From Obrimoposthia wandeli (lineage: Eukaryota), in assembly GCA_977020255.1 (NCBI GenBank), contig CDROCS010004705.1, forward strand, positions 1 to 64,000: a DNA stretch of 64,000 bases, given 5' to 3'. Below, piece after piece: positions 1-61,997 of this stretch. The number at the start of each line of letters is the position of its first letter. Within the stretch, counting starts at the first letter, position 1. The notes beneath the pieces were generated by a model. That model was not told the origin of the DNA, searched no databases, and was given only the letters and a program-made list of their open reading frames with translations. A program made the translations under genes and the position numbers.

Positions 1-113
1 TATGGCAGATAAATCGAGCGGCCAATCAACATTCACAGTACCACTACAGATTAGATAAATTCGTAGCTTTTTTTAAACGTGGTGCATGTAACAAGGAGTT
101 AGAAAAAGAGTGA
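1..113 (+). CDS. 3' end of an unidentified CDS running in from the left edge
   Basis: Open frame from nt 3 (WQINRAANQHSQYHYRLDKFVAFFKRGACNKELEKE) to TGA 111-113, followed by a hairpin at 141-163. Confidence 0.4.
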   Translation, partial: WQINRAANQHSQYHYRLDKFVAFFKRGACNKELEKE

Positions 114-132
114 AGAGGAGAGATACTTAGCT

Positions 133-163
133 AAAAAAAGAGGCTACCCAAAAAGGGTAGCCT
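133..163 (-). terminator. Intrinsic terminator of sRNA copy 1
   Basis: Stem aggctaccc/gggtagcct (141-149/155-163); A7 at 133-139 on + is the U-tract on -. Confidence 0.85.
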
Positions 164-260
164 AAAATGACAAGAACCGTGTACCCCTATAAAACTTAAT
201 GTGAAGTAATATAAGAGTGGTGAAGATAACCCGATGATCAAATCGTGTTGTCTTGCGAGC
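133..260 (-). ncRNA. Putative Fur-repressed small RNA, copy 1 (RyhB/PrrF-like in layout)
   Basis: Promoter TTGCAA-17-TATCCT overlapped by a Fur box; ~128 nt body conserved in a second copy; ends in a hairpin plus U-tract. Confidence 0.75.
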
Positions 261-266
261 AAAGAA

Positions 267-296
267 AGGATAATGCAATTGAGAATGATTTGCAAT
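267..296 (-). promoter_or_regulatory. sigma70 promoter with overlapping Fur box
   Basis: Minus strand TTGCAA atcattctcaattgcat TATCCT; + strand TGAGAATGATTTGCA (280-294) resembles the Fur 7-1-7 repeat TGATAATnATTATCA. Confidence 0.75.
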
Positions 297-554
297 AGTA
301 TTTGCAATAAAAATATAAATAATGACTTTGAAATAGATCAGCAGTTCGCCACTCAACTTAGCGGGCGGTAATAAGACAAGAAAAACACTGGCGTCATAGC
401 TACATTTGCTGGTGCAAACGCACTAATTGCGTCGATTTATAGTGCCGTATTACTGGTATCTCAGTAGCGTAATGTCTCACACTTGCTTGAGGCTTAAATG
501 TAATGTGAGCTTTTTCAGCTACACTTGAAGGAGTGAGTTGTTGAGGTAATCAAA

Positions 555-737
555 ATGCGCTATCAAGAAATAGTTATAAAATTACTCAAATATTATGCAG
601 GTTATGCGTTTACACTCGCCTTCATGCTACAAAGTAGCTGGGTTTTAATACTCGCAGTAGCTGCGTTGTTAGGCGTTGTATCAATAAGAAAAATACCCAA
701 GAAATATTTTAAACCGCAGAAGAAACTAAAGTTTTAA
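555..737 (+). CDS. Small 60-aa membrane protein
   Basis: RBS GAGGT before ATG; hydrophobic core followed by a Lys-rich C-terminus. Confidence 0.6.
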   Translation: MRYQEIVIKLLKYYAGYAFTLAFMLQSSWVLILAVAALLGVVSIRKIPKKYFKPQKKLKF

Positions 738-822
738 ATAGTTAAATGCGTGTCGTAAACAAATAGAAGTTGTGTGCACAGAAGGTATTTCAGAGGGTGT
801 TTAAAGTAACAATCATTAGGTT

Positions 823-954
823 AAAAAAAGGGAGCTACCCAAAGTGGGTAGCCTAAAATGACAAGAACCGTGCATACTCACGTGCTACCTAAAGGTAAGT
901 AACACAAGAGCGGTGAAGATAACCCGATGATCAAAATCGTGTTGTCTTGCGAGC
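823..954 (-). ncRNA. Putative Fur-repressed small RNA, copy 2
   Basis: Paralog of 133-260; promoter TTGCAA-17-TACTAT; terminator stem gctaccc/gggtagc (834-840/846-852) plus U7. Confidence 0.75.
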
Positions 955-960
955 TAGGTA

Positions 961-990
961 ATAGTAATGCTATTGAGAATGATTTGCAAT
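961..990 (-). promoter_or_regulatory. sigma70 promoter with overlapping Fur box
   Basis: Minus strand TTGCAA atcattctcaatagcat TACTAT; same TGAGAATGATTTGCA motif at 974-988. Confidence 0.75.
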
Positions 991-1433
991 AGCGTTTTGT
1001 GTGTAAGTTGAATAAATAAGCTAAATAAATAGAGGGTTTTTTATTGTGGCTATTTGGGAGCGAAATAGAGTCTTGAGATAGAAAATCTGCATGTTAGCCT
1101 TTTAAAGAAGTTTAACCACAGAGGACACAGAGAAAAGATAAAGAAAGAATCTTAATGGTGGATTTTTTCGTTATGAGTAGGGCACAGGTTTGTAAAATTG
1201 GCTTGTTGTCGATATTTAGGCATGGTTGTCTGATAGTTCTAAGTTAATGTGGAAATCGATAAAATGAGGCCATTATTAATTTTAGAATAATCTCACAGGT
1301 AGCTACTATTCCTTAGAAGGTAATATCCGTGTTAGTTATAATTACTCTGGCACCATGTTTTTTTTTAGCCATTAAACAACATTCTCTGGTATAGCACTCG
1401 TCAGGGAATTACAGATACTCTTTTGTCATAGCA

Positions 1434-2311
1434 TCAGTAGACATTCCGTAAATAGATGCTTGAACTGTCCTTAAAGATATCATTCTCAACTATTGTAAGT
1501 GCGGTACCTGATGTAGTTAATAATCCAGGTTTAAGTACACCAGCATTGTTCTTATAAACAAGGCAGTAATCACTAGATGCATAAATCGAGTTAACTGTTA
1601 CATTTATGGTCACTGCTTTGCCTTTGTACTGGTTTTTTGAAATAAAATATTTTTGTGGATTAGGAGGATAGTCATTTTCATATTCATCCGATGTGCCGGC
1701 TACTTCACCTCCTAGACCTAAACTTTGAAGTTCAATGTTAGCTAATACCAATGTAGATGAATCATTTGGAATAGTTAAAGTAGAGCCATTATTAAATTTC
1801 CATCCATAATTGGCATCAGGGTTGTCTTTACAGCTAGGGGAATTTTGATTCCCCAACCATCTCTGAATACTGCAATTTTACTTATGGTTTTACCATTGTT
1901 ATCACAAATTGATTTATAACCAGTTGGCCTGAGATATGGACCTTCCCAATTAGGATCATCAGTCCAATTCCCAGTTGGAGTTAATGCTTCGCAATCAATT
2001 TCATTATCTTCTTCAGAAGGAATTGAACAATGTTTATTGCTCATCAAATTCTCAATAGAAGCAGGCAGTCTCCCTGTATCCGCTATAAAACCACTAATTG
2101 TTGGTTGTCCATTAAGTGATCTTGAACTATCACCAATAATTGCATAGCGTATTTGCTCCATGCGCTGTTTAGTCGTTTCAAAGCGTTGCTGGTTTGTTTC
2201 GTTGATTACAAAGTCACTGGCTAAACTGGTAACTAAGCCGAGTAGGCCGATAACGACGATTAGCTCAAGTAGCGTATAGCCGCTTTGTTTTTTTGCGTTA
2301 GATCCAATCAT
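1434..2311 (-). pseudogene. Minor pilin/pseudopilin (GspG-like), split by a 1-nt frameshift
   Basis: Prepilin motif QSG|YTLLELIVVI and WEGPY motif. ORFs 1775..2311 and 1434..1856 join as RDGWG-NQNS if one G is added to the G4 run at 1851-1854, giving ~292 aa. Confidence 0.75.
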
Positions 2312-16429: not shown

Positions 16430-16474
16430 ATTCTATAGGTTAAAAAATATAAATCAACATGATAATCATTATTA
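16430..16474 (-). promoter_or_regulatory. Fur box overlapping a putative sigma70 promoter for the secretin operon
   Basis: CAACATGATAATCATTATT (16455-16473) matches the Fur consensus at 15/19; minus-strand TTGATT-16-TAGAAT. Confidence 0.7.
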
Positions 16475-16708
16475 TTTGCATTTGTATTGTTTTGTTCTAT
16501 GAGCTGTGGCAAAATCCGCTGGTATTTAAGATTAATGCCTTTTTTGATGTTTGAATTATTTAAGATTAACCTTGCGAGATTGTATGAAATCTCCATATAT
16601 AGATATTTCGAGCTTGTATTGCGGTGTGTCTCAATAAGCTTTAGTTTTAAATTGCGTTAACAGCCTAGCTATACACACTTTAATTATTGAGATTTAGAAA
16701 GCTTCATT

Positions 16709-35449: not shown

Positions 35450-35525
35450 GTCCCATTCGTCTAGTGGTCTAGGACACCGCCCTTTCACGGCGGTAACAGG
35501 GGTTCGAACCCCCTATGGGACGCCA
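35450..35525 (+). tRNA. tRNA-Glu(TTC)
   Basis: 76-nt cloverleaf, anticodon loop CTTTCAC, CCA end. Confidence 0.98.
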
Positions 35526-35556
35526 TTATAAGTCTACGTAGTATTTTACGTTGATC

Positions 35557-35632
35557 GCGGGAATAGCTCAGTTGGTAGAGCGCGACCTTGCCAAGGTCGA
35601 GGTCGCCGGTTCGAACCCGGTTTCCCGCTCCA
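35557..35632 (+). tRNA. tRNA-Gly(GCC)
   Basis: 76 nt, anticodon loop TTGCCAA, CCA end. Confidence 0.98.
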
Positions 35633-35653
35633 AGTTACAGATAGATTTGTTAC

Positions 35654-35729
35654 GTCCCATTCGTCTAGTGGTCTAGGACACCGCCCTTTCACGGCGGTAA
35701 CAGGGGTTCGAACCCCCTATGGGACGCCA
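35654..35729 (+). tRNA. tRNA-Glu(TTC)
   Basis: Identical to 35450-35525. Confidence 0.98.
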
Positions 35730-35763
35730 TTTTAAATCTGTAGAGTAAAGTATTATATTGATC

Positions 35764-35839
35764 GCGGGAATAGCTCAGTTGGTAGAGCGCGACCTTGCCA
35801 AGGTCGAGGTCGCCGGTTCGAACCCGGTTTCCCGCTCCA
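35764..35839 (+). tRNA. tRNA-Gly(GCC)
   Basis: Identical to 35557-35632. Confidence 0.98.
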
Positions 35840-35859
35840 AGTTACAGTTAGATTTTTAC

Positions 35860-35935
35860 GTCCCATTCGTCTAGTGGTCTAGGACACCGCCCTTTCACGG
35901 CGGTAACAGGGGTTCGAACCCCCTATGGGACGCCA
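35860..35935 (+). tRNA. tRNA-Glu(TTC)
   Basis: Identical to 35450-35525. Confidence 0.98.
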
Positions 35936-36156
35936 TTTCTAATGCGTTTTCTTATCTCTTCTATCTTTTCAATACACTCTCTAAGCTTTACCACTCGTTT
36001 TATTAATCTTTAATTTTTCTTTTGTTAGTTGCCTGCGCTGTTTATTTTTTTAGCGTTATGGGTGAGCTAAATTTTCTCGCTATTTAAGTAATTTTAACAG
36101 CTGTATTTAAAGGGTTTTTAAGGAAAGCTTAAAAAGGATTAAATGCGAAACTTGTG

Positions 36157-36185
36157 TTGACAAAGATGCCATAGCTCAATATTAT
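36157..36185 (+). promoter_or_regulatory. Promoter of tRNA cluster 2
   Basis: TTGACA-17-TATTAT followed by ACGCG. Confidence 0.75.
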
Positions 36186-36214
36186 ACGCGACTTCCTCAT
36201 TGAGGAAATATGTT

Positions 36215-36290
36215 GTCCCATTCGTCTAGTGGTCTAGGACACCGCCCTTTCACGGCGGTAACAGGGGTTCGAACCCCCTATGGGACGCCA
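36215..36290 (+). tRNA. tRNA-Glu(TTC)
   Basis: Identical copy. Confidence 0.98.
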
Positions 36291-36321
36291 TTATAAGTCT
36301 ACGTAGAATTTTACGTTGATC

Positions 36322-36397
36322 GCGGGAATAGCTCAGTTGGTAGAGCGCGACCTTGCCAAGGTCGAGGTCGCCGGTTCGAACCCGGTTTCCCGCTCCA
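36322..36397 (+). tRNA. tRNA-Gly(GCC)
   Basis: Identical copy. Confidence 0.98.
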
Positions 36398-36418
36398 AGT
36401 TACAGATAGATTTGTTAC

Positions 36419-36494
36419 GTCCCATTCGTCTAGTGGTCTAGGACACCGCCCTTTCACGGCGGTAACAGGGGTTCGAACCCCCTATGGGACGCCA
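36419..36494 (+). tRNA. tRNA-Glu(TTC)
   Basis: Identical copy. Confidence 0.98.
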
Positions 36495-61817: not shown

Positions 61818-61845
61818 TGGTGCCGACACCAAGAGTCGAACTCGG

Positions 61846-61886
<41 letters not shown>

Positions 61887-61893
61887 TGTCGGC
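61818..61893 (-). tRNA. tRNA-Thr(TGT)
   Basis: gccgacatagctcag...cttgtaa...tcggcacca, 76 nt. Confidence 0.97.
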
Positions 61894-61921
61894 GCATTTA
61901 TTATATTGCTTTTCATTTGAA

Positions 61922-61949
61922 TGGTGCCGACACCAAGAGTCGAACTCGG

Positions 61950-61990
<41 letters not shown>

Positions 61991-61997
61991 TGTCGGC
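61922..61997 (-). tRNA. tRNA-Thr(TGT)
   Basis: Identical tandem copy. Confidence 0.97.

What the first reader, a model, noticed from the sequence alone, without database searches (positions are those of the whole stretch)
133..990. Tandem pair of unannotated Fur-repressed sRNAs (RyhB/PrrF analogues)
Seen: two ~130-nt minus-strand units. Each has TTGCAA-17-TA(T/C)(C/T)(C/A)T, the identical motif TGAGAATGATTTGCA in the promoter, the same predicted start (GCUCGCAAG) and an intrinsic terminator. A conserved 5' block and a conserved block before the terminator flank a variable middle. UUAUCUUCACC could pair with SD-like GGUGAAGAUAA, and GUUCUUGUCAUUUU with AAAAUGACAAG, which contains an AUG. Known: duplicated Fur-repressed iron-sparing sRNAs occur in Pseudomonas (PrrF1/2) and Salmonella (RyhB1/2). 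Inference: a lineage-specific family or a remote PrrF relative; the CACGGUU and UUAUCU segments recall PrrF.
Basis: partly seen in the sequence, partly recalled or inferred. Interest (0 to 1): 0.8.

Follow-up and report, generated by a model that had tools for sequence, protein, structure and literature searches.

The report
Paired iron-regulated small RNA genes
Two neighbouring, near-identical small non-coding RNA genes in an uncultured marine bacterium each sit behind a binding site for the iron-sensing repressor Fur, so they are probably this lineage's own version of the iron-starvation RNAs known from E. coli and Pseudomonas, though neither expression nor targets could be tested.

Summary
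Two minus-strand units (954->823, 132 nt; 260->133, 128 nt) are 91% identical. Each has TTGCAA-17-TAnnnT, the same predicted start (GCUCGCAAG) and an intrinsic terminator.

Similarity starts at about -45 and ends at the U-tract, so the duplicated unit is one promoter-to-terminator gene. No reading frame is conserved on either strand.

The variable middle folds into a hairpin in both copies, kept by compensatory changes. A third copy, rebuilt from the source sample's contigs, has an unrelated middle that forms a perfect 11-bp hairpin.

The 20-mer over the -35 and spacer occurs exactly in 54 unrelated metagenome contigs (GC 31-69%). Their neighbours are mainly fur, bacterioferritin, bfd, feoAB and TonB receptor genes, so it is a real Fur box.

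No Rfam family matches, including PrrF and RyhB. The RNA was absent from 185,579 reference genomes and JGI metagenomes by exact word, and from syntenic loci of the nearest relatives (Oceanospirillales near the Osedax symbiont Rs2).

Verdict: a lineage-specific family of Fur-repressed sRNAs. Iron dependence, targets and Hfq use are inferred only. The scan's first readers noted two similar single candidates on other pieces of this assembly.

The parts
823..954 (-). sRNA gene A, predicted transcript of 132 nt (+1 G954 to the end of the U-tract)
   Evidence: The covariance model R1 scores it at 160.5 bits. Folding z-score is -3.5.
961..991 (-). Promoter and operator of A: 20-mer Fur box TATTGCAAATCATTCTCAAT (972-991) covering the -35 TTGCAA (984-989) and the spacer; -10 TACTAT (961-966)
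   Evidence: Sequence. The 20-mer recurs in 54 unrelated contigs next to iron genes. Match to the Fur consensus is 14 of 19, and 11 of 14 in the 7-1-7 form.
833..853 (-). Intrinsic terminator stem-loop of A, followed by a U-tract down to 823
   Evidence: (9 pairs, 5 of them G-C).
876..911 (-). Variable middle hairpin of A
   Evidence: -17.1 kcal/mol, z -2.9. Between A and B it carries 2 compensatory and 3 wobble-compatible changes.
913..929 (-). Conserved, probably single-stranded core CAUCGGGUUAUCUUCAC in A (candidate seed)
   Evidence: Identical in A, B and the reconstructed copy C.
855..872 (-). Conserved 3' block CACGGUUCUUGUCAUUUU in A, U-rich and directly upstream of the terminator (candidate second seed or Hfq module)
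   Evidence: This stretch has the highest extra contig depth in the sample.
133..260 (-). sRNA gene B, predicted transcript of 128 nt (+1 G260)
   Evidence: R1 scores it at 153.2 bits. Folding z-score is -7.7.
267..297 (-). Promoter and operator of B: the same 20-mer Fur box (278-297), -35 TTGCAA (290-295), -10 TATCCT (267-272). A further TATTGCAAAT repeat lies just upstream (about 302-311).
141..163 (-). Intrinsic terminator stem-loop of B, followed by a U-tract down to 133
   Evidence: (9 pairs, 6 of them G-C).
183..218 (-). Variable middle hairpin of B
   Evidence: -11.5 kcal/mol, z -3.0.
220..236 (-). Conserved core CAUCGGGUUAUCUUCAC in B
164..181 (-). Conserved 3' block CACGGUUCUUGUCAUUUU in B
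555..737 (+). Context only: a 60-aa membrane-protein gene between the two sRNA genes, on the opposite strand. It is conserved in Neptunomonas, where no sRNA flanks it.
   Evidence: No Pfam family.

Best explanation
These are two sibling genes of a lineage-specific, trans-acting small regulatory RNA.

Proposed mechanism:
- When iron is plentiful, Fe2+-Fur binds the 20-bp operator that covers the -35 hexamer and spacer of each sigma-70 promoter and blocks transcription.
- When iron is scarce, Fur leaves. A roughly 130-nt RNA is made from G954 or G260 and ends at the intrinsic terminator.
- The RNA has a conserved, largely unstructured 5' arm (core CAUCGGGUUAUCUUCAC). This is followed by a structural hairpin whose sequence is free to vary, a conserved U-rich block (CACGGUUCUUGUCAUUUU), and a terminator with a poly-U tail.
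- The two conserved single-stranded blocks most likely base-pair with ribosome-binding regions of mRNAs, probably with Hfq bound at the U-rich 3' module. This would down-regulate non-essential iron-using proteins, as RyhB and PrrF do.

Shown here: the gene anatomy, non-coding character, conservation of the hairpin, identity of the operator as a Fur box, and absence from known RNA families.

Inferred: transcription, iron dependence, Hfq use, and the identity and direction of the targets.
For: 1. The unit is gene-shaped. The two copies resemble each other only from about -45 to the U-tract, and the stretch between -10 and +1 diverges while the transcript is conserved from the predicted +1.

2. 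Both have TTGCAA-17-TAnnnT promoters and strong terminators. Two further copies in the source sample carry -10 variants TATTAT and TAATAT, which still fit TAnnnT.

3. The 20-mer TATTGCAAATCATTCTCAAT occurs exactly in 54 metagenome contigs of GC 31-69% with unrelated flanks.
- Of the 83 nearest ORFs scanned, matches are FUR 6, Ferritin 5, TonB-receptor Plug 4, Fer2_BFD 3, FeoA 3, FeoB 2, ZnuA 2 and DtxR-type repressor 2.
- In several contigs a TATAAT-like -10 follows at the same 17-18 nt spacing.

4. It is non-coding. No ORF is shared by copies A, B and C on either strand, and the indels are 1 and 2 nt.

5. RNA structure is under selection.
- The middle hairpin keeps pairing through 2 double and 3 single wobble-compatible changes between A and B.
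- Copy C has an unrelated middle that forms a perfect 11-bp hairpin (z -4.6).
- Whole-RNA folding z-scores are -7.7 and -3.5.

6. The method that found PrrF was exactly this: a Fur box plus a Rho-independent terminator in an intergenic region (PMC4211561).

7. The setting is iron-regulated. A near-consensus Fur box (15 of 19; 13 of 14 in the 7-1-7 form) lies at 16455-16479, between the neighbouring pilus-like operon and a Pom/di-haem oxidoreductase cluster.
Against: - There is no expression evidence. The only public runs holding the sequence are contig sets of the source sample, and none is shown to be RNA.
- Against the classical 19-bp Fur consensus the site scores only 13-14 of 19. Matches that good occur about 30 times per shuffled 64 kb, so the Fur assignment rests on the cross-genome recurrence.
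- No homologue was found outside the source sample, so there is no phylogenetic covariation beyond paralogues.
- No target stands out among the 53 translation-initiation regions in the window.
- The typical targets (sodB, sdh, acn, bfr) lie outside the window.
- At least three to four additional diverged copies in the sample could also mean a dispersed repeat.
Confidence: 0.7

Rival explanations
1. These are genuine Fur-controlled sRNAs, but they do not spare iron. They could regulate something else, such as the adjacent Fur-boxed type IV filament genes, siderophore or uptake genes (as OmrA/B do), or the oppositely oriented small membrane-protein gene through terminator read-through antisense transcription. 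A long read-through RNA from A to B, like PrrH, is also possible.
For: - They lie directly downstream of a pilus-like operon that has its own strong Fur box.
- Unit A points into the 3' end of the small ORF at 555-737, so read-through would be antisense to it.
- The pattern of conserved ends with a variable middle resembles OmrA/OmrB, which control outer-membrane and iron-acquisition genes (PMC4211561).
Against: - No significant pairing was found with any translation-initiation region in the window, pilus genes included.
- Both terminators are strong.
- Neptunomonas has the small ORF and the operon but no sRNA between them, so the RNAs are not an integral part of that locus.
Confidence: 0.17
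2. This is a remote member of the PrrF family. It would have been inherited from the common ancestor of Pseudomonadaceae and this Oceanospirillales clade and then diverged beyond model recognition, with a hairpin inserted between the anti-SD segment and the CACGGUU block.
For: - CACGGUUCUUG matches CACGGUUUUUG of PrrF1 at 10 of 11 positions, in the same place just upstream of the terminator. The PrrF1 sequence was assembled from primers printed in PMC2851614.
- Both are Fur-box driven, and both occur as tandem siblings.
- The host belongs to a neighbouring gammaproteobacterial lineage.
Against: - The Rfam PrrF model gives no hit, even at E<=10 on a 141-nt search space.
- The local similarity is marginal (P 0.04-0.05 against shuffles).
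- The nearest relatives' syntenic loci lack it.
- Only 37 nt of PrrF1 could be compared.
Confidence: 0.12
3. This is a dispersed repeat or small mobile cassette that happens to carry a Fur-box promoter and a terminator, with no RNA function of its own.
For: - Extra contig depth, and at least 3-4 diverged copies, cover exactly the promoter, the 5' block and the 3' block in the source sample.
- The syntenic site in the closest complete genome is occupied by a different 262-nt repeat family.
Against: - There are no terminal inverted repeats or target-site duplications.
- Only two copies occur in 64 kb.
- Variation is patterned: the -10 stays TAnnnT, the hairpin is kept by compensation, and the single-stranded blocks are invariant. 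That is what selection on a transcribed RNA produces.
Confidence: 0.05
4. This is a small-protein gene or a type I toxin-antitoxin pair of the Sib/Ibs type.
For: - It is multi-copy and tandem, about 130 nt long, and short ORFs exist on both strands.
- The antisense strand has an SD-like GGUGAAGAU, then 6 nt, then AUG.
Against: - No ORF is conserved among copies A, B and C.
- A 1-nt indel right after the antisense AUG shifts the frame.
- None of the peptides is a conserved hydrophobic toxin.
Confidence: 0.02

Closest known systems
PrrF1/PrrF2 of Pseudomonas (Rfam RF00444)
   Same: - Sibling sRNAs, each with its own Fur-box promoter and Rho-independent terminator.
- Tandem and on the same strand in P. 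aeruginosa (PMC4211561).
- Shares the string CACGGUU(U/C)UUG just before the terminator.
- PrrF was found by the same Fur-box-plus-terminator logic.
   Different: - No covariance-model match.
- The copies here are 91% identical and 562 nt apart, with an opposite-strand gene between them. PrrF1/2 are 95% identical and 95 nt apart.
- These RNAs have a long variable hairpin in the middle.
- The host is an uncultured Oceanospirillales bacterium, not Pseudomonas.
- Targets and iron response are untested.
RyhB and its siblings (RyhB1/2, RfrA/B; Rfam RF00057)
   Same: A Fur-repressed promoter with the operator over the core promoter, a short Hfq-type architecture (single-stranded seed, U-rich stretch, terminator with poly-U), and duplicated copies in some species.
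   Different: The RyhB model scores 14.3 bits against a threshold of 55, on the terminator of copy B only. There is no RyhB core sequence.
OmrA/OmrB of enterobacteria
   Same: A tandem sibling pair with nearly identical 5' and 3' ends and a divergent middle.
   Different: OmrA/B are OmpR-controlled, shorter (82-88 nt) and unrelated in sequence. Here the divergent middle is a conserved hairpin, not a free specificity region.

Membership tests
PrrF (RF00444) | Match to the family covariance model at or above the gathering score | tested here: not met
   No PrrF hit at the gathering threshold, at E<=10 on 1.3 kb, or at E<=10 on each unit alone.
PrrF (RF00444) | Recognisable sequence similarity to PrrF1/PrrF2 | tested here: inconclusive
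   Only 37 nt of PrrF1 were available, from primers printed in PMC2851614. The best local match is CACGGTT(T/C)TTG, 10 of 11, P 0.04-0.05.
PrrF (RF00444) | Fur box in the promoter and a Rho-independent terminator | tested here: met
PrrF (RF00444) | Induced by iron limitation; represses sodB, sdh and other iron-protein mRNAs | not testable with these tools
   No RNA run holds the locus, and the target genes lie outside the window.
RyhB (RF00057) | Match to the family covariance model, including the conserved core | tested here: not met
   14.3 bits against a gathering score of 55, E=2, covering only the terminator of unit B. Nothing for unit A.
Fur-repressed trans-acting sRNA (functional class, not a homology family) | Fur operator overlapping the core promoter | tested here: met
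   The 20-mer covers the -35 and spacer. The exact 20-mer recurs upstream of fur, bfr, bfd, feoAB and TonB-receptor genes in 54 unrelated contigs.
Fur-repressed trans-acting sRNA (functional class, not a homology family) | Independent non-coding transcription unit ending in an intrinsic terminator | tested here: met
   The transcription start is predicted, not mapped.
Fur-repressed trans-acting sRNA (functional class, not a homology family) | Conserved RNA structure and conserved single-stranded seed among family members | tested here: met
   This rests on paralogues only (A, B and the reconstructed C).
Fur-repressed trans-acting sRNA (functional class, not a homology family) | Base-pairing with defined mRNA targets; Hfq dependence | tested here: inconclusive
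   The in-window scan of 53 initiation regions is no better than shuffled seeds. A U-rich stretch plus a terminator with 7-8 U is present, but Hfq binding cannot be tested.
Type I toxin-antitoxin (Sib/Ibs-like) | Conserved small hydrophobic ORF antisense to the RNA | tested here: not met
   no ORF is conserved among the copies on either strand.

The most novel reading that the evidence does not exclude
This is a previously undescribed, multi-member family of Fur-driven modular sRNAs, with two copies here and several more in the same sample. It is confined to an uncultured Oceanospirillales clade near the Osedax bone-worm symbionts and is unrelated by descent to RyhB or PrrF. Two invariant single-stranded arms are separated by a hairpin whose sequence turns over completely while its structure is kept. 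This would be an independent invention of the iron-starvation sRNA, with more siblings than any known Fur-regulated sRNA.
Probability: 0.4. Interest if true: 0.55.

Novelty: new member of a known kind. Interest (0 to 1): 0.45.

Why it matters
Fur-repressed sRNAs have arisen repeatedly (RyhB, PrrF, NrrF, FsrA, IsaR1, IsrR) and are a textbook case of convergent regulatory evolution. A new family with no recognisable sequence similarity to any Rfam family, in an uncultured marine and host-associated Oceanospirillales clade, would add another such case.

With several siblings that share seeds but differ in a structural hairpin, it would also offer a natural series for asking what sibling sRNAs are for.

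In practice it gives annotators a covariance model seed and a validated Fur-box word for this clade. It is not a new principle. The mechanism proposed is the standard one, and nothing is shown experimentally.

Tried and rejected
- **Rfam:** whole window at gathering, 1.3 kb at E<=10, and each unit alone at E<=10. Only terminator-driven noise appeared (suhB, RyhB 14 bits); there was no PrrF hit.
- **Exact-word scans for the RNA:** the 19-mer of the 5' core in 185,579 reference genomes gave 0 hits. The 21-mer of the 3' block in JGI metagenomes gave 0 hits.
- **Plasmid collection,** distant blastn: no match.
- **Syntenic loci of the 14 nearest relatives,** reached through the pilus ATPase: BLAST and covariance model R1 found nothing real. 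The L009/L010 hits (15 bits) lie inside a coding gene.
  - The closest genome has an unrelated 262-nt repeat at that site.
  - Neptunomonas has no space for an sRNA there.
- **Closer relatives through protein look-ups:** the contigs ended before the site or carried no DNA.
- **Model R1 on the 54 Fur-box contigs:** nothing. Rfam on 20 of them found no known sRNA.
- **Target scan of 53 initiation regions in the window:** not better than shuffled seeds.
- **RNA-seq evidence:** none available.
- **Full PrrF sequence from the literature:** recalled strings were not found, and only primer fragments were recovered.
- **Rejected readings:** small-protein or type I toxin, and MITE or other repeat with terminal inverted repeats.
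- **Taxon from the protein atlas:** phylum level only.

Full report
**What is there.**
Read on the minus strand, window 1-1500 holds two units, A (954->823, 132 nt) and B (260->133, 128 nt). Aligned with their promoters they are 85% identical, and as transcripts 91%.

Similarity starts at about -45 and stops a few bases after the U-tract. Inside that span the 6 nt between the -10 and the start differ completely (TACCTA against TTCTTT), and identity resumes exactly at GCUCGCAAG. What was duplicated is therefore one promoter-to-terminator gene.

- Promoters: TTGCAA-17-TACTAT in A (984-989 and 961-966) and TTGCAA-17-TATCCT in B (290-295 and 267-272).
- Terminators: 9-bp G+C-rich stems with U-tracts (3 found in 1.5 kb against 0.7 expected).
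- The conserved 5' and 3' blocks and the operator each occur exactly twice in the 64-kb window, against at most 0.07 expected.
- There are no terminal inverted repeats and no tandem repeats.

**It is RNA, not protein.**
The copies differ by 1-nt and 2-nt indels. No ORF is shared among A, B and a third copy on either strand. This also excludes a Sib/Ibs-type toxin.

Both RNAs fold much better than shuffles (z -7.7 and -3.5). The variable middle is a hairpin in both, and between A and B it keeps pairing through two double (A-U to G-C) and three wobble-compatible changes.

**More family members.**
The only public runs holding the locus are contig sets from one sample, with 7.3 million contigs, so it is metagenome-like. 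Laying those contigs at 80% likeness showed extra depth exactly over the promoter, the 5' block and the 3' block. It also showed at least three to four further diverged copies.

From the difference table I rebuilt one of them, copy C.
- It has the same operator.
- Its -10 is TATTAT.
- Its 5' arm is GCUCGUAAGAUAACACAAUUUACACAUCGGGUUAUCUUCAC.
- Its 3' block is unchanged.
- Its middle is entirely different, yet folds into a perfect 11-bp hairpin (z -4.6).

Another copy has -10 TAATAT. The pattern is the signature of selection on a transcribed, structured RNA:
- the -10 always stays TAnnnT;
- CAUCGGGUUAUCUUCAC and CACGGUUCUUGUCAUUUU are invariant;
- the hairpin is kept in structure but is free in sequence.

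Whether the extra copies are paralogues in this genome or orthologues in co-occurring relatives cannot be told. First readers of this scan noted single 'Fur sRNA' candidates on two other pieces of the assembly. I did not see those sequences.

**Is the operator a Fur box?**
Against the classical 19-bp consensus it scores only 13-14 of 19 (11 of 14 in the 7-1-7 form). At 40% G+C that is unremarkable, since about 30 such sites occur per shuffled window.

The decisive result came from scanning JGI metagenomes for the exact 20-mer TATTGCAAATCATTCTCAAT. It gave 54 contigs, with G+C from 31 to 69% and unrelated flanks.

The nearest ORFs on either side (83 scanned) hit these families:

| Family | Hits |
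|---|---|
| FUR | 6 |
| Ferritin/bacterioferritin | 5 |
| TonB-receptor Plug | 4 |
| Bfd | 3 |
| FeoA | 3 |
| FeoB | 2 |
| ZnuA | 2 |
| DtxR-type repressor | 2 |

In several contigs a TATAAT-like -10 follows TTGCAA at 17-18 nt, the same geometry as here. The word is thus a widely reused Fur operator that doubles as the -35 and spacer. Placed there, it should repress. None of those contigs holds the sRNA or, in the 20 checked, a known sRNA.

**Whose genome, and is the RNA found elsewhere?**
Two independent genes place the organism in Oceanospirillales.
- The pilus-type ATPase is 82% identical to 'Oceanospirillales bacterium MAG-10' (CP093399), then 68% to Motiliproteus and Neptunomonas.
- YejF is 76% identical to CP093399 and 75% to an 'Osedax' symbiont Rs2.

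The RNA's 19-mer core is absent from 185,579 reference genomes. Its 21-mer 3' block is absent from JGI metagenomes, and nothing matches in plasmids.

In relatives the gene order is conserved: pilus operon, 60-78-aa membrane protein, then a 74-aa protein. The sRNAs are not there.
- Neptunomonas japonica has no room for them.
- CP093399 has an unrelated 262-nt repeat family instead.
- Model R1 finds only a chance hit inside a gene.

The family is therefore young or lineage-restricted, or it sits elsewhere in those genomes.

**Known families.**
No Rfam family matches at gathering or at E<=10, even on each unit alone. RyhB reaches 14.3 bits against 55 on a terminator, and PrrF does not appear at all.

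Primers printed in PMC2851614 give PrrF1 ...CUCCUCAUCAGGCUAAUCACGGUUUUUGACCCGGCAC. CACGGUUCUUG matches 10 of 11 in the same pre-terminator position, but P is only 0.04-0.05.

So it works like PrrF and RyhB by anatomy. By the tests available it is not a member of either family.

**Mechanism and limits.**
The best reading (0.7) is that Fe-Fur occludes the promoters. On iron starvation, two (or more) sibling RNAs of about 130 nt are made. Their conserved single-stranded arms then pair with mRNAs, probably with Hfq on the U-rich 3' module.

An iron-sparing role is the default by analogy (PMC4211561). It is untested. No RNA data exist, the classical targets lie outside the window, and an in-window scan was no better than shuffled seeds.

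The neighbourhood is itself iron-regulated, with a strong Fur box at 16455-16479.

**Verdict.**
This is a sound first-stage call. The finding is a credible new sRNA family of a well-known functional kind. It is of moderate interest and needs a Northern blot and a whole-genome search.

Noticed in passing
window 1434-2311 (-): The last pilin-like gene of the neighbouring operon is split into two overlapping ORFs (178 aa at 1775-2311 and 140 aa at 1434-1856). Its homologue in Neptunomonas japonica is one 289-aa protein (L004 12033-12902). This points to a frameshift or a sequencing error near 1775-1856.
   Followed up: partly
window 16455-16479: This is the best Fur box in the window (15 of 19; 13 of 14 in the 7-1-7 form). 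It lies between the start of the pilus-like operon (minus strand, 16257) and a plus-strand cluster beginning with a Pom-type porin (16963) and a di-haem oxidoreductase (18033).
   Followed up: partly
metagenome loci L081-L134: The exact 20-mer TATTGCAAATCATTCTCAAT is a recurrent Fur operator across bacteria of 31-69% G+C. It often serves as -35 plus spacer in front of bfd, bfr, fur, feoAB and TonB-receptor genes, which makes it a useful search word for Fur regulons.
   Followed up: partly
L001 13135-14496 (CP093399): At the site syntenic to the sRNA pair, the closest complete genome carries three to four copies of an unrelated, G+C-rich repeat of about 262 nt (90-95% identical). One copy of the same kind seems to sit at the end of contig L135.
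   Followed up: no
window 555-737 (+); L004 12904-13140: A small hydrophobic protein (60 aa here, 78 aa in Neptunomonas) is conserved next to the pilus-like operon. It has no Pfam family.
   Followed up: partly
window 996-1210: Several short contigs of the source sample match this stretch upstream of unit A at under 95% identity, with a 9-nt indel (CACAGAGGA) at 1116. This means strain variants or another repeated element.
   Followed up: no
window 35450-36494 and 61818-61997: There is an array of eight alternating tRNA-Glu(UUC) and tRNA-Gly(GCC) genes, and a pair of identical tRNA-Thr(UGU) genes.
   Followed up: no
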